Position numbers and translations under genes: made by a program. The notes below the pieces were generated by a model, which saw only the letters and a program-made list of their open reading frames with translations, had not been told where the DNA came from and did no database searches. Shown in pieces: positions 3,795-56,093 of a stretch of DNA of 64,000 bases (the stretch's first letter is position 1; each line of letters opens with the position of its first letter). The stretch spans positions 1-64,000 of the IMG/VR virus record IMGVR_UViG_3300028883_000032. One strand, written 5' to 3'.

Positions 3795-4211
3795 ATGAAA
3801 ACAGAACATTTACAGCAATTACTTGTGTCCGGACAGTTTATAGGATCTCACATGTGCCTTGCCAAAGACATAGGATCAAACGGAAATCTCTTTGGGGGTA
3901 ACATGCTAGCTTGGGCAGACGAAATGGGTGCTATTTTTGCTAAAAAGTTTACTGGAGAACCAAAGCTCGTAACTGTTCAAATGGACGCGGTTGAATTCAC
4001 TGTTCCAGTACATGAAGGCGAAATAGTTGATTTCTATGCCGCTAACCCCAAACCCGGCCATACCAGTTTAACGTTCACTCTTGTTGTTGCCAAACCGAAC
4101 AATGCCGACGGGGTAAGACAAATTGTATTTACAACGCGATTTGTTTTCGTGGCTGTCGGCGATGATGGGCACTCCAAACCAATTGAAAGGTTTGCAGAAA
4201 AGCGCCCATAG
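3795..4211 (+). CDS. acyl-CoA thioesterase (hotdog fold)
   Basis: NGNLFGGNMLAWADE motif, VTVQMDAVEF, GHTS, FVFVAV; 3' end overlaps the tRNA. Confidence 0.85.
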   Translation: MKTEHLQQLLVSGQFIGSHMCLAKDIGSNGNLFGGNMLAWADEMGAIFAKKFTGEPKLVTVQMDAVEFTVPVHEGEIVDFYAANPKPGHTSLTFTLVVAKPNNADGVRQIVFTTRFVFVAVGDDGHSKPIERFAEKRP

Positions 4212-4274
4212 TTCAGTGGTTAGAACAGCGGACTCTAAATCCGTGTGTCCTCGGTTCAAGTCCGAGTGGGCGCA
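4202..4274 (+). tRNA. amber suppressor tRNA (CUA anticodon)
   Basis: GCGCCCA/TGGGCGC acceptor, anticodon stem GCGGA/TCCGT with loop CT-CTA-AA, T-loop TTCAAGT. Confidence 0.85.
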
Positions 4275-4287
4275 CAAAGGAGACCTA

Positions 4288-8780: not shown

Positions 8781-8821
8781 GTTTTTTTGGCGGAGTGGCG
8801 GAATTGGCAGACGCGCTAGAC

Positions 8822-9358
8822 TTAACTCAAAGAATTTAGAATGTCATAAGCATTCTTTACTACATCACGAACTAGTGTTTTACCACCAGAGTAAACCCTT
8901 ACGATTGCGTTTTTTCTATTTACGTCCTTTTGAAATTTAGCGTTAGGGTAAATATCTAAGAAACCCTTAGCATCGCTTTTAGATTTTGCCAACACAACCA
9001 ATCTTATACTTTTGGCGCTATATACTTCAGTCAGCATTGAAGTTATTAAGTCTATTAAGTTTGGATCTTGGTTGCAAAATTGAAATATATTAGCTTTTTC
9101 TGTACGATACCCTTCACACAGATAAGCAATATGGCCTGCTATGCTAAGGTTAGTCTTTAATAAAGATTGATCCGGGTTTTGATGACTTACTCTGGGAAGA
9201 TAATTATATTCAGATGCACTACGCATAGAAATATTGTGAAATTTTAAATACTTACGAACTGTTTTGTGATCACATTTTAAAAGCATTCCAATTTCATAAG
9301 GATTTAATTTATCTTCTAAGTAGAGTTTTTCTAGTTCATGTTTAGTAAAATTCTTCAT
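8822..9358 (-). CDS. intron-encoded HTH + degenerate LAGLIDADG-like putative homing endonuclease
   Basis: 178 aa from MKNFTKHELEK; HTH (LYLEDKLNPYEIGMLLKCDHKTVRKYL) then IAYLCEG..FQFCNQDPNLI; antisense to the intron. Confidence 0.6.
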   Translation of the reverse strand: MKNFTKHELEKLYLEDKLNPYEIGMLLKCDHKTVRKYLKFHNISMRSASEYNYLPRVSHQNPDQSLLKTNLSIAGHIAYLCEGYRTEKANIFQFCNQDPNLIDLITSMLTEVYSAKSIRLVVLAKSKSDAKGFLDIYPNAKFQKDVNRKNAIVRVYSGGKTLVRDVVKNAYDILNSLS

Positions 9359-9626
9359 CCTGAGCCTTTGGTTAGAAATAACTAATTGAATTCGGCTATA
9401 TGCGGGAAACTCATAAAGCCTACAGTACCATACGTATACCAATAGTATACTAAATTGGAAATACGTTGTCAAGTAAAAATCTGTAGGATGTACAATTGAC
9501 AATCCGCAGGGAAGCCTGTAATGGCCCCTCAGAGACTAAACGCCGAACCCTTAACAGGTAATGCTGAAGGAGATGATATAGTCCAGACCACAACAGAATA
9601 TGGCTTGTGAAAGCAAGTGTGGTAAG
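8824..9626 (+). mobile_element. group I self-splicing intron (~803 nt) in the tRNA anticodon loop
   Basis: Core elements ATGCGGGAAACTC (P), AATCCGCAGGGAAG (Q), TCAGAGACTA (R), GATATAGTCC (S); ends in G; splice point +/-1 nt uncertain. Confidence 0.88.
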
Positions 9627-9723
9627 AGGATCTAGTGTCTTCGGACGTGTGGGTTCGAGTCCCACCTCTGCTACCATTAAGATAAACTCATATGAGACAT
9701 ATGCAAAGCGACATAAAAACAAT

Positions 9724-9784: not shown

Positions 9785-10777
9785 ATGAATATCATAGTGA
9801 ATTCTCTGATAAACGACAGAAGTTCATTTGGAAGAGTCGGCTATAATTTAGTTTTAGCTATGACTAAACTTGGTCATAAAGTTAAAACTGTTGCATGGCC
9901 GGAAAGTAATTTTGATATTGTAGAAACTCTACCAAAACCTGACTTTGCTAGCCCTGATTTATGGGTAAGGCTGTCGCATCCAGATGGCCCAGTAAGCCAT
10001 CCAGACTGTGAACACGCTGGGTTACTGACTGTATTTGAATCCACAGGACTATATAAGCACACAAAAATAGGTAACCTCAAACCCCTTGATTTCATCGCTA
10101 CTCCTAGCGAATGGTGTTCCAATATCTTAAGGAATATCAAGAAAGATATCCCAATCTTTACTTGGAATCACGGGTACAATCCAATCCTTCCTTTTAAAAC
10201 AAACATTAATGATCAAGTAACTACCCTACTAACTGTTGGGTGTATGGATGATCGTAAGCACATCTACAATTTTCTTAAATTATTTGAAGACAATTTTAGG
10301 AATTCAAATGAAATTAAGTTAATAGTAAAATCTCAAAAAGGATTTAATCCTAGGTATTGTCTTGATTGTAAAAACGTAAAATTTGTAGATAAAGAGCTTA
10401 ATAAATTAGAACTAGAAAAGCTTTATTTAAGTGCCAGCGCCTATGTTATGCCATCAAGGGGTGAAGCCTTTGGTTTAACCGCTTTGGAAGCCGCCATGAT
10501 GGGTATACCTATAATGGTCACTAATTTTAGTGGGCCAGTAGATTATTTAGACGATTGCGCATCCATTAAATTAGACTATGACCTAGTAGATACTCCAAAT
10601 AGCGGACCTTGGGCAGGAAAATGGGCAAAACCAACAGACGATGCCATCCTTACGGGAATTGAAGAGTTAGTGACTAACAATAAATTGGGTATAAAAGCAG
10701 TAGATGTGGCACAAAATGTTAGAGACAAGTGGTCATGGGAAATAACTACTGAAAGGTTTTTAAATAGTATACAATGA
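9785..10777 (+). CDS. glycosyltransferase family 4
   Basis: YVMPSRGEAFGLTALEAA (E-x7-E) motif. Confidence 0.9.
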   Translation: MNIIVNSLINDRSSFGRVGYNLVLAMTKLGHKVKTVAWPESNFDIVETLPKPDFASPDLWVRLSHPDGPVSHPDCEHAGLLTVFESTGLYKHTKIGNLKPLDFIATPSEWCSNILRNIKKDIPIFTWNHGYNPILPFKTNINDQVTTLLTVGCMDDRKHIYNFLKLFEDNFRNSNEIKLIVKSQKGFNPRYCLDCKNVKFVDKELNKLELEKLYLSASAYVMPSRGEAFGLTALEAAMMGIPIMVTNFSGPVDYLDDCASIKLDYDLVDTPNSGPWAGKWAKPTDDAILTGIEELVTNNKLGIKAVDVAQNVRDKWSWEITTERFLNSIQ

Positions 10778-12417
10778 AAATTCCTTTATTTGTATCAACA
10801 TTCAATAGAATAGAGACTGTAAAACAATCATTGACAAGTCTTGCAAACTCAAACTTACCAGACTATGTCCAAGTAATCATTAGTGACGATGGATCAAGCG
10901 ATCCAGTTGTTCCACAAATTAAAAGGTTATATGGAAAGTTAGGTTGGGAAATACATGCGAACCATCATAGGGAGTTCCCCGAAGGAAAGTTGGCCCCTAT
11001 ACGAGAACATTTAGACAGGTTTCCAGATGCCCCATACTTTCTAGTTTCTGATTCTGATATGTTATACACCAAAAACTGGGTACAGGCTTTAGAAAAGATA
11101 TATCGTGACACTAAAAAGGATGGTGTAAATCCGGCCGTTATAACTGGTTTTGATACGGAGTGGAATCAACATAGAATAGTAGAAAGACATGGATATTGGG
11201 GATTTAAGGGAACTGTTGGTGGTGCAAACCTATTAGCAGATAGAGAATTTTACAATAAGTGGCAATGGAATGGAATGCATTGGGATTGGGGAATATGTTC
11301 AAAAGCAGGAGAATTTGATTACAAGCTCGTTAGCAGTTGTCCATCTTTAACTGAACATATTGGGAAACATGGTAAATTTTCAAAACCGGGTAAATATGAC
11401 GTAGCGGTTCATTTTGAAGGTGAAGATTTCGATGCCATGGAAATTTTTAATCCGGAGTATAAATACTTGAGTGAAACAGCACTAGTAACAGCAGGACAAG
11501 GGGTAGGAAACATAGTAATGGCTACTCCATTAATAGAAGCTCTGCACGATTTAGGATATATAGTAGATTTTATGGTTGGATGTAACTGGCCTAAAAGCAA
11601 AGAGTTGTTTTTTGAAAACCCACATTGTAGAAATGTTGCTTGGAGTAATGAGCATATAGATGGTTTCTATAATATAGTTGTTGAAACTGCTTGGAGTTTT
11701 TCTTCTTGGGAAGGAAAATATGCTACCAATAGGTTGGCACGACACGATCGCCACGTAAAAGTGGACAAATCAGTAGTTGACCACCAATACCGTAATCATG
11801 AAATCCACCATAACCTAACTCCAGCAATTCAGCTTGGTATGGATGAATCCAAGATGAACAGCTACAAGCCTTTTGTTAACACCCTAATGCCCCACAACTA
11901 TAATACTGATTCAAAGGTTATAGGAATTCATGCAGGGTGTAATCCAAGACCCGAATGGGAAGGTAAAAAATATCCGTACTATCAAGAGCTTGTTTACTTA
12001 TTAAAAAGAGACGGATATAAAATTGCACTATTTGGCACTGATACGGACCAACATTTAAAGGATGTTGATTATGACTTTATAGGAGCAACTAATGTCCAAG
12101 GAGCAGCAGAACGCATCGCTGGCTGTGATATATTTATTTCTAACGATTCTGGATTAATGCATTGTGCAGGCGCCAGCCAAATACCACAAATAGCTATATT
12201 TGGGGGCGAAGGTTACAAGAAAATGGTTAAAAACGACCCTCGACTATATAATGATAAGGCTATTGTAATTGGCGCGGAAGACTTAAGCACTATTTCTCCG
12301 GAACAGGTGATGGATACTCTCAAGTATGGTAAGTTCTCTAAAAATAAGTATCAAGGTAGTGTAGATATTCCAATTAAACCAAAAGTGAAGCGTAAAACAA
12401 CCACTAAAAAGAAATGA
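10774..12417 (+). CDS. bifunctional glycosyltransferase, GT2 (N-term) + GT9-like (C-term)
   Basis: IISDDGSSD/SDSD N-terminal; GVGNIVMATP and FISNDSGLMHCAGA..IAIFG C-terminal. Confidence 0.85.
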   Translation: MKIPLFVSTFNRIETVKQSLTSLANSNLPDYVQVIISDDGSSDPVVPQIKRLYGKLGWEIHANHHREFPEGKLAPIREHLDRFPDAPYFLVSDSDMLYTKNWVQALEKIYRDTKKDGVNPAVITGFDTEWNQHRIVERHGYWGFKGTVGGANLLADREFYNKWQWNGMHWDWGICSKAGEFDYKLVSSCPSLTEHIGKHGKFSKPGKYDVAVHFEGEDFDAMEIFNPEYKYLSETALVTAGQGVGNIVMATPLIEALHDLGYIVDFMVGCNWPKSKELFFENPHCRNVAWSNEHIDGFYNIVVETAWSFSSWEGKYATNRLARHDRHVKVDKSVVDHQYRNHEIHHNLTPAIQLGMDESKMNSYKPFVNTLMPHNYNTDSKVIGIHAGCNPRPEWEGKKYPYYQELVYLLKRDGYKIALFGTDTDQHLKDVDYDFIGATNVQGAAERIAGCDIFISNDSGLMHCAGASQIPQIAIFGGEGYKKMVKNDPRLYNDKAIVIGAEDLSTISPEQVMDTLKYGKFSKNKYQGSVDIPIKPKVKRKTTTKKK

Positions 12418-47734: not shown

Positions 47735-48605
47735 AAAAAGAGCTGCCCAGTACTTTATACCTCACGATTTTAAAGAAGAGGTAGAAGTGCTTAACCAGTC
47801 TTCTTACTGTATATGGATGACCCCGCTAGCCTTTCAAAAAATGTGGCATTTTGTCGATATTTGTAGTCAAGAAGTTGGCTGGCTTGGATCGGTTGAACGA
47901 GAGGGAAGAAATTTCATTATAACCGATGTTTTCATGTTTGAGCAAGAAGTTACAGGGACTACAACATCTCTCGATGAAGCTGGCCAGACTAAACTTATGG
48001 AAAATTTTCTGGCACAAGAGAATGGTACAGAGCTTTATAACTCTATAAGGTTCTGGGGACATAGTCATGTTAACATGGGAACAACTCCAAGTGGTCAAGA
48101 TGAAACCACAATGAAGGAATTCGAAGAAAATGGCTGTGCGTGGTTTATAAGAGGCATATTCAACAAAAGAGGACGAGCACAGTTTGATATATTTTTATAC
48201 GACGAAGGTGTACGAGTAAACGATGTTCGTTGGGCAATTCTTGTTGAAATGCCGGAATTTGATATCCGCAAAGAGTTGGAAACTGAAATACAAAAGAAGG
48301 TTACCACAAAAAAGTATGTATATCCTTCGTACGCAGGTGGATGGGGAGGAGGAAATGGCTATGACCCTACCAAGAGGACTGGGAATGGTACTGTTAACCA
48401 CTCAGTCCACCCTACTGTAGGTCAAGGGAACCGCTCATCGTCACAGCAGGGAAATGTCTGGGACGAATTTTATACGGCAAATCCAAGCGGAACTCTTGAC
48501 CTAGATGAAGACGACGAAGGAACAACCTTTTTCAACAATAATGGAGTTGTTGAAGAACTAAAACCAGAAACTAAAAAAGAGACAAAAAAGGACAAAACTA
48601 AATGA
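47712..48605 (+). CDS. JAB/MPN-family metalloprotease
   Basis: QEVGWLG..EQEVTG..WGHSHVNMGTTPSGQD; low-complexity tail. Confidence 0.88.
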   Translation: MAKKKPNKKRAAQYFIPHDFKEEVEVLNQSSYCIWMTPLAFQKMWHFVDICSQEVGWLGSVEREGRNFIITDVFMFEQEVTGTTTSLDEAGQTKLMENFLAQENGTELYNSIRFWGHSHVNMGTTPSGQDETTMKEFEENGCAWFIRGIFNKRGRAQFDIFLYDEGVRVNDVRWAILVEMPEFDIRKELETEIQKKVTTKKYVYPSYAGGWGGGNGYDPTKRTGNGTVNHSVHPTVGQGNRSSSQQGNVWDEFYTANPSGTLDLDEDDEGTTFFNNNGVVEELKPETKKETKKDKTK

Positions 48606-49294
48606 TCGATCCTTTACGTCACTTGGCTATTTTTGATCCTGATGCCTTTGGTCCCCGACGAGTTGATGTAATAGGTGTGGGTGCAACTGGATCAAAAGTT
48701 GTGTTGGAACTTGCAAAACTCGGCATAGTTAACATTCACGTATGGGATTATGACAAAGTCGAAGAACACAATGTTCCCAACCAAGTTTTTGGAAATGATC
48801 ATGTTGGGATGTTCAAAGTTGACGCCATATCAAAAATTGTCAAGGCACAAACTGGTATTGACTTAGTAACTCATAACGAAGAAGTAGACGGTACTCAAAC
48901 TTTTGGTGATATAGTATTCTTGCTAACCGACACCATGAAAAGCCGTAAATCAATCTTTGAGAGGGGCATTAAATATAAATTTAATGTCAAATTAATGATT
49001 GAAACGCGGATGGGAAAAGACAGCGGGCAGATATACTCCATCATTCCGACAAAACCGGATCACATCAAAAATTGGGAAAATTCCCTGTTTAGCGATGATG
49101 ACAAAGATACTGAAGTATCTCTATGTGGAAGTACAATAACTGTTGGGTCAACTGCCGGAATAATTTCGGGCCTAGCGGTTTGGAAAGTCATTGAATGGCT
49201 TCAACACGAAACCGGCAAACTGGAAAATGGAATTGCTAACGAAACAATGATTGATATTTCCCCCAAGTTAGCAGTTTATCAAAACAAATATTAA
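48602..49294 (+). CDS. ThiF/E1-like activating enzyme
   Basis: GVGATGS, WDYDKVEEHNVPNQ, KV, TDTMKSR, ETRMG, candidate catalytic Cys SLCG. Confidence 0.92.
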   Translation: MIDPLRHLAIFDPDAFGPRRVDVIGVGATGSKVVLELAKLGIVNIHVWDYDKVEEHNVPNQVFGNDHVGMFKVDAISKIVKAQTGIDLVTHNEEVDGTQTFGDIVFLLTDTMKSRKSIFERGIKYKFNVKLMIETRMGKDSGQIYSIIPTKPDHIKNWENSLFSDDDKDTEVSLCGSTITVGSTAGIISGLAVWKVIEWLQHETGKLENGIANETMIDISPKLAVYQNKY

Positions 49295-49314
49295 CTCAGG
49301 AGTAGAATTTCAAG

Positions 49315-49524
49315 ATGGAACCTATTCAAGTACGTGTAGGAACAATTCCTGGTGGAGTCTCCGAATTTGCAATCATAGATGCAACAGTTCGTGGAGCACT
49401 TACAGCAGCAGGCCTTGAGGCGGACGGTTACAAAATCAATGTAAACGGCGTGGCAGCTAACTTAGACACACCGTTACGAGATGGTGATAATGTTCTTCGT
49501 GTTCGCAAGGTTGTTGGTAACTAA
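49315..49524 (+). CDS. ubiquitin-like (ThiS/MoaD-fold) protein ending GN
   Basis: 69 aa; ATVRGAL..INVNG..LDTPLRDGDNV..KVVGN. Confidence 0.85.
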   Translation: MEPIQVRVGTIPGGVSEFAIIDATVRGALTAAGLEADGYKINVNGVAANLDTPLRDGDNVLRVRKVVGN

Positions 49525-49639: not shown

Positions 49640-50431
49640 ATGAAGCTACTTGAGTGGACCATAGCTGGAGGATTAGACGCCCCCATGGTCTTGTGTGAGG
49701 CTAATGCAGTGTTCGGGTCGCTGAATGTCAAACGACCAATGTGGGCAAGAGTTGTAACATCAATGGGTCACGAAATACCCCCATATCTTAAAAGCTGTAT
49801 GCATGGGTTAGATGGGCTTTTAACTGAAGCTACACTACTTATCAATCGAGCTATTCTCCCAGGAATGGGAGAACAGGCAATGGTAAACATGCCGGAATCT
49901 CCAGCAGGAGAAACCAGAATAGAGTTTCTAACTCCTGGAGGAGTGAAGTTTAGCATAACCAAACATTTAGAACTTTCTTCCCTCAATGTTGCATGGAGAT
50001 TTGGAAGAAATAGTCACTACGCAGCCAATAGGGTACTTCAAGGGTTACTGACTTGTGCGCCAACAAGAGAAACAGCCTTAATACTTGACCATCTATCTGA
50101 CTTAATAAGGAGTTGGAAGATCGAGGTAGGGGGTAATGGACCAACCTCTAATTTCAAAATTGGCCAATGCTTTTCATATCCGAATAACTATGGAAGCTGG
50201 CTTTATATAACAACCACTAAAGAGGCGTGCTATGCTGTAGCAAAAGTGACAGCTCCTGAAACCAATCTTGGGTTGGGGGTATTGGGAAAAGATTTAGACC
50301 CAACATCCCCCAAAAACCAGTGGCTAAATCATGTAGCAGTAGTTGTGGGGAGGGATGAAAGGGGAACTATCGCCGCTTACCACTCTGATTTCCATTACTA
50401 CTTCTTGCACCTTCAAAGAAAATACAGATAG
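49640..50431 (+). CDS. hypothetical protein
   Basis: 263 aa, GGAGG RBS, flanked by terminators. Confidence 0.65.
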   Translation: MKLLEWTIAGGLDAPMVLCEANAVFGSLNVKRPMWARVVTSMGHEIPPYLKSCMHGLDGLLTEATLLINRAILPGMGEQAMVNMPESPAGETRIEFLTPGGVKFSITKHLELSSLNVAWRFGRNSHYAANRVLQGLLTCAPTRETALILDHLSDLIRSWKIEVGGNGPTSNFKIGQCFSYPNNYGSWLYITTTKEACYAVAKVTAPETNLGLGVLGKDLDPTSPKNQWLNHVAVVVGRDERGTIAAYHSDFHYYFLHLQRKYR

Positions 50432-50473
50432 TTGCGGGGATGCGACCAAGATAACAACCAGTGTTATCTTGAG

Positions 50474-50500
50474 AAGAGGCCAGCATGTTGGCCTCTTTTT
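50474..50500 (+). terminator. rho-independent terminator
   Basis: AAGAGGCC-agcatgtt-GGCCTCTT + TTT. Confidence 0.75.
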
Positions 50501-50569
50501 AAACATTTATGTAAATTTAGAATTTTTATGGTATAAGATTTTATCGTCGCGCTTTAGGCTTGCTTAAAG

Positions 50570-51345
50570 TACGACATCGGCCGCATGGGTCGTTAGACAT
50601 AAACCTTGAAAGAGGTGGATAGGGGCGTTGGCAACGTCCGGTCGTAGACAGTCAAAATGCAATCCGTTCCTCCTTCCTTAAAATTCCCGAGGGCAACGCT
50701 GTAGGCGAACCAACTGGAAGGACTCGAAACGAGACAACCAAAACTGGTGTGGACAAGTAACACGTGGTGGTGACTTGGAAACGTACCAACCAATTAATGG
50801 TGAATCGGACGGAAAGGTGGTGTGGTTAGATCGGCTCCTGTTAGAGTCGGTGTGGCTATCTACCATTCAAGGAATTTCTAGACCAGAAATCTAGAAAAAC
50901 TGCGAATCGGGGGACCAACAGGCCTCTGTGATGGAGTAGAGTATTTCGTTGCTCAAAAGGTAACGAAGCTCAAATCCCAGCGCTTCATCAGCCGAGAATT
51001 TTTAACAGATTCGCTCGGGTACGAGCACTTACTATCAATAAGTGAGATCATTTAAAGCACAAGACTGGGACGTGCTGAAACCTAAAGATGCCTCCGCCTT
51101 TAGTGGCCCTTAATTACTCGCAAGGTAATTAAGTTGTGTCGGAAACTAACTTTGCCCCGGCCAGGGTAAAGGGAGTGGTAAGATGCAGAAAGGTTCAGCT
51201 GGAAGACATGTGAAACCAATCTCGGGTTCACGGCATTTCCTACATACGTAAAGACATTTGCGTGGACACACCCTAAACCCAAATATTATGGGAATGTGGG
51301 GGTAAAAGTGTAGGATCAAATAGTCACGTCTAAACTATTTGATTT
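50570..51345 (+). ncRNA. large structured ncRNA, GOLLD-like candidate
   Basis: ~770 nt without a + strand ORF, many hairpins (CTCGAAACGAG, TTTCTAGA..TCTAGAAA, TTCGTTGCTCAAAAGGTAACGAA, TTAATTACTCGCAAGGTAATTAA); tRNA-rich phage context; terminal hairpin + T run. Confidence 0.6.
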
Positions 51346-51382
51346 TTTTAGCCTAAAATGGAATAAGAGTGTATACAAACTC

Positions 51383-51745
51383 TTGGGAGGAAAAGTGAAA
51401 AAGTTGGTGCTTTTACTGCTGCTTGTGATGGTAACGGGATGTTGCCATCACCCATTAGGGCTGTGGAGATCGGAATCCACCCTGTATGAGCTTCAATGGA
51501 GCTTTGAGAACCAGCATATTTATTGGGGAAGAGCAGTAATAAGCTACGACTCCGTATGGACTATTGTTGGAGAGCCAGAAGTAGGCCTAGCCGTTATAAG
51601 AGGGGATACTCTAAATTTGTATATAGACAAGGAGTTGAAATACAGCCTTTTGGTTAAAAACGAAAAATACATACAGATATATCCGGAATATATGCTTCTG
51701 ACCGGCAGTTGGATAAACCGGGAGGACAGTCCAATGGGCAAGTAA
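51383..51745 (+). CDS. putative lipoprotein
   Basis: KKLVLLLLLVMVTG-C lipobox-like N-terminus (start probably GTG 51395). Confidence 0.55.
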   Translation: MGGKVKKLVLLLLLVMVTGCCHHPLGLWRSESTLYELQWSFENQHIYWGRAVISYDSVWTIVGEPEVGLAVIRGDTLNLYIDKELKYSLLVKNEKYIQIYPEYMLLTGSWINREDSPMGK

Positions 51746-54760: not shown

Positions 54761-55159
54761 ATGACAAAAACTGAATTTCGAGAATTGTGGAAAGCTGCAG
54801 AAGAAAGCGGATTAGATAGATTCACTGTTATCTACTTAAGTTCCGGAGCCAAACACAATGGGCTGCTAGGAGAAATACTATTCAAACAGAATAGTATAGG
54901 AAACTCATACCCGAGTGTATTTTTTTCAGGAACGGGGCAAAGAATTACTACCTCCCTCGACAAATTAGTTGCAACGGAACAAAATTTTATTCGAACTCCA
55001 AAGGAACTGCAACCTGGATTAGAAATCTTGGTTATGGCTAATGAAGGTTCATTAGATATTGTTAATGAATCAGAAGCAATAAAGAAATTACAAAAAGATC
55101 CCAAAACAAAAATATTTACGTGTTTAATACGAAAGCAAGTTGAATTAAGACTTGTGTAA
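54761..55159 (+). CDS. hypothetical protein
   Basis: 132 aa, AAGGA RBS. Confidence 0.6.
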   Translation: MTKTEFRELWKAAEESGLDRFTVIYLSSGAKHNGLLGEILFKQNSIGNSYPSVFFSGTGQRITTSLDKLVATEQNFIRTPKELQPGLEILVMANEGSLDIVNESEAIKKLQKDPKTKIFTCLIRKQVELRLV

Positions 55160-56093
55160 TCAAGGAGATAAAAATGCTGGGAGCTCTACGGGCCTAATGG
55201 CCCCCCACAAAGTTATTGATGTAGTACAAGAAGAGTTTTATAAAGTAAATTTAACTTTAGACAATAATTTTAGATTGTCACCCCCAGACAAAACAACAAA
55301 TTTTACAACGGCAGGAATGCAGTGGTTTAAGAACCGCTTTAATAATCCGGACGGGACAAGATGTGGTAGCAGACAATCTTGTTTACGTACAAACGATTTG
55401 TCCTTAATTGGGGACGGGACACATTTAACCTATTTTGAAATGCTGGGAAATTTTTCATTTGGAAATAACGATTATGAACAATCGGTAGAATTGTGGCACA
55501 ATATTGTTTCTCAATTAAAAATCCCAGTTACATATGTTACGGTACACCCGTCACAAAAATACCATAAGAGAGTTTGGGAGAGGTTGCATTACCCCATAAA
55601 AGAAGACGAAAGCTGCGTGTGGTCAGACGGTAATATCGGAGGATACTGTTGTGAAATGTTTGTTAATGACCTCGAAATCGGGAATCTGGTAAATACTTCT
55701 GGAGTTTCAACAGATGTGGGTTTTGGTTTTGAGAGGTTAGTACAAGTTTATGAAAACCAAACAAATATTCATGACACAACTTTGTTTGATTGCTCTTTAC
55801 CTCCTTTTGTCAGAGACCACGTTCGCGCCTTGAATGCGTTATATCTTAACGGTATAAAACCGGGAGCAAGTGGACCAAATTACTCCGCCAAACTAATACT
55901 CAGAAGAGTACTATCTCATCTTGACCCAAAATGTTATAAGTTTGGGCACTGGTTAGAACAAGAAAAACTAATTAGTGAAGATGGTAAGTACAGAGCTAAA
56001 AAACACTTTAACCGCTATGGTATTAAAGACTATGACTTTGTTAAAGCCACATTTGGTTTAACAGCCGAAGAATATGAGGAAGTACTATCGTGA
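55152..56093 (+). CDS. truncated alanyl-tRNA synthetase-like protein (catalytic core only)
   Basis: DKTTNFTTAGMQ.FK, QSCLRTNDL..IGDGTHLTYFEMLGNFSF, EIGNLV, DVGFGFERL, RDHVRA..G.KP...GPNY...LILRR. Confidence 0.85.
   Translation: MCNQGDKNAGSSTGLMAPHKVIDVVQEEFYKVNLTLDNNFRLSPPDKTTNFTTAGMQWFKNRFNNPDGTRCGSRQSCLRTNDLSLIGDGTHLTYFEMLGNFSFGNNDYEQSVELWHNIVSQLKIPVTYVTVHPSQKYHKRVWERLHYPIKEDESCVWSDGNIGGYCCEMFVNDLEIGNLVNTSGVSTDVGFGFERLVQVYENQTNIHDTTLFDCSLPPFVRDHVRALNALYLNGIKPGASGPNYSAKLILRRVLSHLDPKCYKFGHWLEQEKLISEDGKYRAKKHFNRYGIKDYDFVKATFGLTAEEYEEVLS

What the first reader, a model, noticed from the sequence alone, without database searches (positions are those of the whole stretch)
50570..51345. ~770-nt highly structured RNA (GOLLD-sized)
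Seen: the longest stretch without a + strand ORF, bounded by an upstream terminator plus TGGTATAAG (-10-like) and a downstream hairpin with T run, and dense in hairpins. Known: GOLLD and ROOL are giant ncRNAs of unknown function often found in phages near tRNA genes. Assigning it to GOLLD is an inference from size, context and remembered motif resemblance.
Basis: partly seen in the sequence, partly recalled or inferred. Interest (0 to 1): 0.6.

Follow-up and report, generated by a model that had tools for sequence, protein, structure and literature searches.

The report
Divergent GOLLD RNA, jumbo phage

Summary
The region is a real, strand-specific, highly structured non-coding element, and it is a GOLLD RNA. 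Rfam's GOLLD model (RF02032, which covers the 3' domain only) matches 50929-51337 (+) over its full length at 126.7 bits, E ~1e-35. That is 23 bits under Rfam's curated 150-bit cut-off, which is why a default scan misses it. In 49 other viral records GOLLD scores run continuously from 340 down to 131 bits, so this copy sits at the divergent end of the family. A covariance model built only from the 5' domains of 31 other GOLLD loci hits the window once, at 50576-50802 (E ~2e-6). The distal 5' part (50803-50928) is not detectably like the common type. The copy lacks hairpin P21b, as does the solved 12-mer Streptococcus GOLLD. It keeps the L14, L20 and GNRA L24 loops and a palindromic L21 loop. 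It also keeps the L27-J24/26 tertiary pair through a compensatory change. Metatranscriptome contigs from two studies hold a ~94%-identical relative. Both start at 50558/9, carry no flanking gene, and replace the linker. Verdict: a new, divergent member of a known family; function unknown.

The parts
50469..50502 (+). Terminator-like hairpin with a U run that ends the upstream gene (ORF 49640-50431); marks the left edge of the transcription unit
   Evidence: Terminator scan; -20.3 kcal/mol, z -5.9
50529..50537 (+). Extended -10-like element TGGTATAAG; candidate promoter, with a predicted start near 50544 (inferred, not shown)
   Evidence: Sequence; no canonical two-hexamer promoter by the scan
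50558..51349 (+). Whole GOLLD RNA, about 790 nt. The 5' end is taken from where relatives' RNA contigs begin; the 3' end from the terminal hairpin plus U run
50576..50802 (+). Proximal 5' domain, homologous to the common GOLLD 5' domain. It contains a GAAA-loop hairpin (50604-50615), the helix UCCUUCC/GGAAGGA (50671-50677 with 50716-50722), and the conserved core mini-hairpin
   Evidence: Model R1, built from 31 other loci: the only significant hit in 64 kb, 28.8 bits, E 1.7e-6, model 1-217 of 217; nhmmer alignments
50687..50705 (+). 19-nt core CCGAGGGCAACGCTGTAGG, identical in many GOLLD loci; its inner GC-AAC-GC hairpin covaries across loci
   Evidence: 37 of 119 loci carry it with 3 or fewer mismatches, mostly ~265 nt upstream of their 3' domain; here 242 nt
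50803..50928 (+). Distal 5' part, three predicted hairpins, not detectably like the common GOLLD type
   Evidence: Model R2 of the common distal 5' domain gives no hit here; fold -45.4 kcal/mol, z -4.15; the relative's substitutions at 50819, 50832 and 50850 keep pairs, and its 1-nt deletion at 50841 falls in a predicted loop
50929..51337 (+). Conserved GOLLD 3' domain, full-length match to Rfam RF02032
   Evidence: 126.7 bits, E 9.4e-35, model 1-416 of 416; same hit in the genome-wide search
50929..50990 (+). First long hairpin of the 3' domain (P13/P14 in my mapping), with the conserved A-rich loop UCAAAAG at 50953-50959
   Evidence: CM alignment; coordinates
50991..51053 (+). Variable linker, the stretch that is disordered inside the cage in the solved structure; no tRNA is embedded here
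   Evidence: In the ~94%-identical relative, 50994-51053 is replaced by 66 unrelated letters; tRNA scan; linker described in PMC12286853
51054..51066 (+). Conserved junction motif AAAGCACAAGACU (consensus AAAGCAAAAGUCU); the relative's homology resumes exactly here
51109..51133 (+). P19/P20 hairpin with the conserved loop CUCGCAAGG (51117-51125), the L20 kissing-loop partner in the solved cages
   Evidence: PMC12286853, PMC12990946
51155..51166 (+). Single P21 hairpin with loop CGGCCA (palindrome GGCC), a candidate self-kissing loop joining the two half-shells; the second hairpin P21b is absent
   Evidence: CM alignment shows model positions 249-264 deleted; same architecture in L037 and L005, both above the cut-off; Sag GOLLD lacks P21b
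51246..51263 (+). P24 hairpin with GNRA tetraloop GACA (consensus GAAA)
51264..51267 (+). J24/26 GGAC, tertiary partner of L27 GUCU (51328-51331)
   Evidence: Covariation across loci: GGAU:AUCU 68, GGAA:UUCU 12, GGAC:GUCU 1. The window's C:G version was read by eye from the sequence because the script's regex missed it
51313..51349 (+). Terminal hairpin (P27 equivalent, extended to 12-13 bp) with the divergent loop CACGUCUAA (51325-51333) and a U run; probably doubles as the terminator

Best explanation
The stretch encodes a GOLLD RNA of a divergent lineage, carried by a 206.9-kb phage from a marine-sediment metagenome. It is transcribed on the + strand as its own unit of about 790 nt, between the upstream gene's terminator and a terminal hairpin with a U run. 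It folds into the two GOLLD domains. The 5' domain has a proximal part (50576-802) homologous to the common GOLLD 5' domain and a distal part (50803-928) that is not detectably like it. The 3' domain (50929-51337) has the family's helices, a replaceable 60-nt linker, and the loops that make inter-subunit contacts in the solved GOLLD cages: L14, L20, a GNRA L24 and a palindromic L21. By homology with the cryo-EM structures of env-38 (14-mer) and Streptococcus agalactiae GOLLD (12-mer, also without P21b), the most likely molecular behaviour is protein-free self-assembly into a closed dihedral RNA cage with the linker facing inward. Shown here: homology of both domains, strand-specific structure, the compensatory tertiary pair, and a discrete RNA-library contig of a close relative. 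Inferred: the promoter, the exact ends, cage formation and subunit number. The biological role is not known for any GOLLD. My best guess is a lytic-phase role tied to the phage's translation island, such as sequestering or scaffolding tRNAs or ribosome-related factors; I put that at about 0.3.
For: Full-length RF02032 match, 126.7 bits, E 9.4e-35 and 3.8e-36, and no other family in the region. Family scores in 49 other viral records are continuous from 340 to 131 bits, with 40 above the cut-off. 5'-domain model R1, built without the window, gives a unique full-length hit at 50576-50802, E 1.7e-6, next best 0.46. A 19-nt identical core and other blocks are shared with other loci. Only the + strand folds exceptionally, z -6.9 against -1.1. 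L27-J24/26 is kept by a C:G compensatory change that fits the family's covariation. The P21b-less, GGCC-loop architecture is shared with above-cut-off GOLLDs L037 and L005 and with the solved Sag GOLLD. RNA-library contigs from two studies are ~94% identical, both begin at 50558/9, the 747-nt one ends inside the element, neither holds a flanking gene, and the linker alone is swapped. Six of 7 substitutions at pairs with probability 0.8 or higher keep the pair. The relative's indels would frameshift the small - strand ORFs. The window holds 21 co-oriented tRNA genes.
Against: The score is 23 bits under Rfam's gathering cut-off. The L27 loop differs from the near-invariant GUAAUCUCA at about 5 of 9 positions, and hairpin P18 is truncated. 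The distal 5' domain shows no homology to the common type. No close relative was found in IMG/VR or JGI metagenomes, so covariation within this lineage rests on one relative. Contigs cannot prove transcription, strand or ends. No canonical two-hexamer promoter was found, and the 3' hairpin is AU-rich. tRNAs are not immediately adjacent: the nearest are 3.0 and 5.8 kb away.
Confidence: 0.9

Rival explanations
1. It is a GOLLD-related RNA that should count as a separate sister family. It shares an ancestral 3' core but has its own 5' module and altered tertiary loops, and possibly a different assembly or function.
For: Below Rfam's cut-off. No homology in the distal 5' part. Divergent L27 and truncated P18. 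R1 score of only 28.8 bits against 137-255 for typical loci. Not close to any of the 119 loci.
Against: The RF02032 alignment is end to end and keeps the family's signature loops and the covarying tertiary pair. Scores in the family form a continuum that already includes 131 and 149.6 bits. GOLLD is defined as having a variable 5' region. Other divergent 5' subtypes score 30-47 bits on R1 while having 3' domains above the cut-off.
Confidence: 0.06
2. It is a decaying, non-functional remnant of a GOLLD gene.
For: Low score, missing P21b, shortened P18, changed L27.
Against: A relative from a different habitat is ~94% identical, with mostly pair-preserving changes, and only the known variable linker is replaced. 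It appears as discrete contigs at depth 9 and 24 in RNA libraries of two studies. The compensatory C:G keeps a tertiary contact. The + strand structure signal is strong.
Confidence: 0.03
3. The region is protein-coding (small ORFs, mostly on the - strand), or it is another known large RNA such as ROOL, OLE or a group I/II intron.
For: - strand ORFs of 57-66 aa exist.
Against: No + strand ORF of 60 aa or more. The relative's 1-nt insertion after 50743 and 1-nt deletion at 50841 would frameshift the - strand ORFs. The - strand has no structure signal, and every other gene here is on the + strand. No Rfam family other than GOLLD scores better than E 0.039 in the region.
Confidence: 0.01

Closest known systems
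GOLLD RNA, env-38 type (Rfam RF02032; 833 nt; cryo-EM 14-mer D7 cage, PDB 9MEE; PMC12286853)
   Same: Two-domain layout. Full-length match to the 3'-domain model. L14 UCAAAAG, the junction motif AAAGCA.AAG.CU, L20 CUCGCAAGG, a GNRA L24 and the L27-J24/26 pair. A variable linker after the first 3'-domain hairpin. A proximal 5' domain with a GAAA-loop hairpin and the conserved core. A phage genome rich in tRNA genes.
   Different: About 40 nt shorter. No P21b, so one rather than two self-kissing loops between the half-shells. P18 truncated. The L27 loop is changed at about 5 of 9 positions. The distal 5' domain is not detectably homologous (126 nt against ~178). The score is below Rfam's cut-off.
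Streptococcus agalactiae GOLLD (700 nt; cryo-EM 12-mer, PDB 9L0R; reviewed in PMC12990946)
   Same: Lacks P21b and has a reduced 5' domain. A single L21-L21 kissing loop joins the two planes. Here the single P21 loop carries the palindrome GGCC, as it does in viral loci L037 and L005.
   Different: This copy is about 90 nt longer and comes from a jumbo phage of sediment or soil, not a Lactobacillales prophage. Which 5' helices are missing could not be matched to those missing in Sag.
ROOL RNA (phage or prophage, ~600 nt, 8-mer or 6-mer cages)
   Same: A large phage-borne non-coding RNA near tRNA islands that forms RNA-only cages, so it works in a similar way.
   Different: Unrelated sequence and fold. 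No ROOL match in the region at E up to 10.

Membership tests
GOLLD (RF02032) | Significant, full-length match of the conserved 3' domain to the family covariance model (Kretsch et al. retrieved members at cmsearch E of 1e-5 or less) | tested here: met
   Model 1-416 of 416 at 50929-51337 (+), 126.7 bits, E 9.4e-35 and 3.8e-36; retrieval criterion quoted
GOLLD (RF02032) | Score at or above Rfam's curated gathering cut-off of 150 bits. This is an operational annotation threshold, not a biological feature | tested here: not met
   126.7 bits; not listed in the gathering-mode scan. Other viral loci with full-length alignments also fall below it at 131 and 149.6 bits, within a continuum up to 340
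GOLLD (RF02032) | Signature 3'-domain loops and junctions: L14 UCAAAAG, AAAGCAAAAGUCU junction, L20 CUCGCAAGG, GNRA L24, helices P22-P27 | tested here: met
   All are present with minor changes (junction AAAGCACAAGACU; L24 GACA). About 9 non-canonical pairs are flagged in the alignment. P18 is truncated and L27 is divergent
GOLLD (RF02032) | Tertiary pairing of loop L27 with junction J24/26 | tested here: met
   Family covariation is GGAU:AUCU (68), GGAA:UUCU (12), GGAC:GUCU (1). The window has GGAC (51264-67) and GUCU (51328-31), read from the sequence
GOLLD (RF02032) | Variable linker after the first 3'-domain hairpin, sometimes holding tRNAs | tested here: met
   50994-51053 is replaced by 66 unrelated letters in a relative that is ~94% identical elsewhere. 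No tRNA lies in it here. 13 of 119 other loci have one
GOLLD (RF02032) | P21 arm with a palindromic self-kissing loop or loops (L21a and L21b in env-38; a single L21 in Sag) | tested here: met
   One hairpin at 51155-51166 with loop CGGCCA. P21b (model 249-264) is absent, as in L037, L005 and L007 and in Sag GOLLD
GOLLD (RF02032) | 5' domain of a GOLLD type (the family's less conserved half) | tested here: inconclusive
   Proximal part met: the R1 leave-one-out model hits 50576-50802, 28.8 bits, E 1.7e-6. Distal part not met: R2 gives no hit at 50803-50928
GOLLD (RF02032) | Size of about 700-830 nt or more, and phage or prophage context near tRNA genes | tested here: met
   About 790 nt. The virus record is 206,856 bp. 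The window has 21 tRNA genes, all on the same strand; the nearest are 3.0 and 5.8 kb away
GOLLD (RF02032) | Expressed as a discrete RNA | tested here: inconclusive
   Contigs of 486 and 747 nt from metatranscriptomes of two studies cover a close relative, start at 50558/9 and hold no flanking gene. Contigs cannot prove transcription, strand or ends, and they are not from this phage
GOLLD (RF02032) | Protein-free assembly into a closed dihedral homo-oligomeric cage | not testable with these tools
   Known for env-38 (14-mer) and Sag (12-mer). Here it is only inferred from retained contact loops
ROOL / OLE / group I or II introns | Match to the family covariance model | tested here: not met
   No such match at E up to 10 in 50300-51500

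The most novel reading that the evidence does not exclude
This element and its rhizosphere relative would found a distinct GOLLD subclass: below Rfam's cut-off, with a three-hairpin distal 5' cap module of its own, a single GGCC self-kissing L21 loop and a remodelled L27 hub. Its cage would differ in subunit number or geometry from the solved 12-mer and 14-mer. That would make it a natural test of how 5'-cap architecture sets RNA-cage stoichiometry.
Probability: 0.3. Interest if true: 0.5.

Novelty: new member of a known kind. Interest (0 to 1): 0.33.

Why it matters
GOLLD is one of very few natural RNAs known to build large protein-free cages, and its function is still open. This copy shows three things. 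First, real GOLLDs exist below Rfam's cut-off, so default annotation undercounts them. Second, the family reaches jumbo phages of sediment and soil. Third, a lineage with a different distal 5' module and a single L21 loop still keeps the core contact loops and a compensated tertiary pair. It would therefore be a useful additional data point for relating secondary-structure differences to cage stoichiometry. It does not by itself reveal the function.

Tried and rejected
- Default Rfam scan at gathering thresholds: no GOLLD reported. Only the E-value mode found it.
- blastn against GenBank phages: no match.
- nhmmer of both halves against 119 GOLLD-motif loci: only weak collinear hits and no close relative.
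- Sequence-only HMM of 32 other 5' domains: nothing with default filters. With filters off, only weak hits, though in the right place and order (E 0.014 and 2.3). This is why covariance models were built.
- Synteny searches with the upstream ORF and with ThyX: no syntenic relatives.
- Lineage-specific patterns: none in viral contigs. The single metagenome hit is the window's own contig.
- R2, the model of the common distal 5' domain: no hit in the element.
- Comparison with the divergent R1 group (L102, L101, L050, L006, L076, L057, L017): not similar to this element's distal part.
- Shared protein neighbours across GOLLD loci: none, apart from an AAA_33-like protein in L009 and L090, whose hits are identical.
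- TAG recoding as the reason for the CUA tRNA: no signal in long-ORF coverage.
- Weak SL1, SraG and other Rfam hits (E 0.04 or worse, far under their cut-offs) were treated as noise.
- My early idea that UGCGA at 50897-50901 is the L20 kissing partner was dropped. The literature places the partner in J13/15 or L15, and I could not map it.
- The original 2009 GOLLD paper could not be fetched under the id I tried.

Full report
**Observation**

The window is the first 64 kb of a 206,856-bp virus record that is rated complete. It is the same contig as a JGI metagenome record, and a marine-sediment run holds it at 100%.

Between the ORF ending at 50431 and the next gene (RBS plus GTG at about 51396), no + strand ORF of 60 aa or more occurs from 50568 to 51382.
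- A strong terminator-like hairpin at 50469-50502 (-20.3 kcal/mol, z -5.9).
- TGGTATAAG at 50529-50537.
- A 13-bp AU-rich hairpin with a U run at 51312-51349 (z -2.8).

The + strand of 50540-51350 folds far better than shuffles (z -6.9). The - strand does not (z -1.1).

One detail is wrong. This is the third-longest + strand ORF-free gap, not the longest. The two longer gaps are occupied by tRNA genes and an intron.

**Identity of the 3' half**

At gathering thresholds Rfam reports only tRNAs and a group I intron in the window. In E-value mode, GOLLD (RF02032) aligns over its whole length (1-416) to 50929-51337 (+) at 126.7 bits, E 9.4e-35. The whole-genome search gives 3.8e-36 and only this one copy. 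No other family in the region scores better than E 0.039.

To judge a sub-threshold score, I fetched viral loci carrying a generic GOLLD motif and scored 49 of their records. Forty exceed 150 bits. Scores fall continuously from 340 to 131 bits, and two other full-length matches lie below the cut-off. Kretsch et al. collected family members at E of 1e-5 or less (PMC12286853). So the 150-bit line is an annotation threshold, and this copy is a divergent homologue.

**Identity of the 5' half**

The Rfam model covers only the conserved 3' domain. Pairwise nhmmer showed that the upstream half shares blocks with the regions upstream of other GOLLD 3' domains. One is a 19-nt identical core (50687-50705). 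Another is a block containing a GAAA-loop hairpin near the 5' end. The core occurs in 37 of 119 loci at a fixed distance from the 3' domain, and its inner hairpin covaries.

A sequence-only profile was too weak to be convincing. I therefore built a covariance model, R1, from 31 other loci, without the window. It has 217 positions and 59 pairs. Searched with filters off over all 64 kb, it gives one significant, full-length hit at 50576-50802 (+): 28.8 bits, E 1.7e-6 (rough), with the next best at 0.46.

On 88 further loci, R1 scores fall into a close group (137-255 bits) and a divergent group (30-47 bits). This element belongs with the divergent group but is not similar to its members in the distal part.

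A second model, R2, of the common distal 5' domain finds nothing at 50803-50928. That 126-nt part folds into three hairpins (z -4.15) and is not detectably like the common type. [quoted passage not shown]

**Structural details**

The mapping of helix names to the Rfam model is my own inference from the papers' descriptions.

*Kept:*
- L14, UCAAAAG.
- The junction motif after the linker.
- L20, CUCGCAAGG.
- A GNRA L24 (GACA).
- P22-P27.

*P21:* it carries one hairpin with loop CGGCCA, and P21b is absent. L037 (206.5 bits) and L005 (192.7 bits) have the same single GGCC-loop hairpin, and L007 also lacks P21b. The solved Streptococcus agalactiae GOLLD lacks P21b as well and forms a 12-mer, whereas env-38 forms a 14-mer (PMC12990946).

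*L27:* the loop, near-invariant elsewhere, is changed here. However, its pairing with J24/26 covaries across loci (U:A 68, A:U 12, C:G 1). The window, read by eye because my regex missed it, has the C:G version: GGAC at 51264-67 and GUCU at 51328-31. That is a compensated tertiary contact.

**Relatives and expression**

No close relative was found in GenBank phages, IMG/VR or JGI metagenomes. However, contigs from two rhizosphere metatranscriptomes in different studies match the element:
- They match 50558/9-50993 with 22 mismatches and 2 gaps.
- In one run they also match 51054-51279, with 17 mismatches.
- The 60 nt at 50994-51053 are replaced by 66 unrelated letters, exactly where the family's variable linker lies.
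- Both contigs begin at the same position. The 747-nt contig ends inside the element. Neither includes a flanking gene.

This is what a discrete, abundant RNA would give. But these are contigs, from a relative rather than this phage, and they cannot show strand or true ends.

Of the listed substitutions at MFE-paired positions, 12 of 17 keep a canonical pair. At pairs with probability 0.8 or higher, 6 of 7 do. This is weak evidence, because the MFE structure is unvalidated. The relative's two 1-nt indels would frameshift the small - strand ORFs.

**Context**

- The window has 21 tRNA genes, all on the + strand, plus a split tRNA described under the passing observations.
- Neighbours of the element include a ThiF-like protein, a weakly ThiS-like ORF, ThyX, an AAA_33-like protein and an AlaRS-fragment-like protein.
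- None of these recurs near other GOLLD loci, apart from an AAA_33-like protein in two loci (L009, L090) whose hits are identical.
- tRNAs do recur: 45 of 119 loci have one within 1 kb and 13 have one inside the linker. ARAGORN placed every tRNA call on the GOLLD strand.

**Mechanism**

Shown:
- Homology of both domains.
- Strand-specific structure.
- Retained contact loops.
- One compensated tertiary pair.

Inferred:
- Transcription from the extended -10, starting near 50544.
- Termination at the P27-like hairpin.
- Self-assembly into a dihedral cage with the linker inside.

The function of GOLLD is unknown in the literature. I lean towards a lytic-phase, translation-linked role, with low confidence.

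**Verdict**

The element is a new, divergent member of a known family. It is of moderate interest, mainly as a natural variant for studying RNA-cage architecture and as a reminder that default Rfam thresholds miss such copies.

For the split tRNA noticed in passing, I did not build or search a joined (spliced) sequence; ARAGORN was run on the contiguous genomic stretch only.

Noticed in passing
window 8789-9676 (+): A class II tRNA gene split in its anticodon loop by a group I intron of about 800 nt (Rfam core 9345-9604, 71.1 bits). ARAGORN in intron mode finds the tRNA with a 790-nt intron but labels it SeC. By group I splice rules I read exon 1 as 8789-8823, the intron as 8824-9626 and exon 2 as 9627-9676. 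That gives the anticodon stem CUAGA/UCUAG and the anticodon UAG, so tRNA-Leu. It explains the largest + strand ORF-free gap. The first ~520 nt of the intron have no + strand ORF of 60 aa or more. A 226-aa - strand ORF (8822-9502) overlaps it and has no Pfam match.
   Followed up: partly
window 4202-4275 (+): A tRNA with anticodon CUA, which reads the TAG stop codon (ARAGORN labels it 'Pyl'; Rfam tRNA 71.8 bits). Long-ORF coverage across the whole 207-kb genome shows no TAG-recoding signal: 0.854 under code 11, 0.908 with TAG read through, 0.886 with TGA, 0.964 with TAA. It looks like a suppressor tRNA in a standard-code phage.
   Followed up: partly
window 48602-49524 (+): A ThiF-family (E1-like) protein (PF00899, E 5e-22) is followed directly by a 69-aa ORF with a weak, sub-threshold ThiS match (E 0.0033). 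This may be a small ubiquitin-like activation pair. It lies just upstream of GOLLD, after three unannotated ORFs of 535, 453 and 297 aa.
   Followed up: no
window 55152-56093 (+): A 313-aa ORF matches only the N-terminal catalytic part of class II alanyl-tRNA synthetase (PF01411, E 2e-20; profile positions 28-139 of 552). It sits among tRNA genes.
   Followed up: no
window 9785-12417 (+): Two glycosyltransferase genes lie just after the intron-bearing tRNA. One also matches the 'GT4 in conflict systems' family (PF20706, E 9e-12).
   Followed up: no
records behind L041 (G039) and L036 (G035): One viral record (G039) carries two full GOLLD copies, at 322 and 312 bits. A 424-kb record (G035) has one copy at 200 bits plus a weak second hit at 40 bits.
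   Followed up: no
119 GOLLD-motif loci (L002-L120): ARAGORN placed all 512 tRNA calls in these loci on the same strand as GOLLD. tRNAs are embedded in the GOLLD linker in 13 loci, for example L007, L044 and L017. The strand parsing was not independently checked.
   Followed up: no
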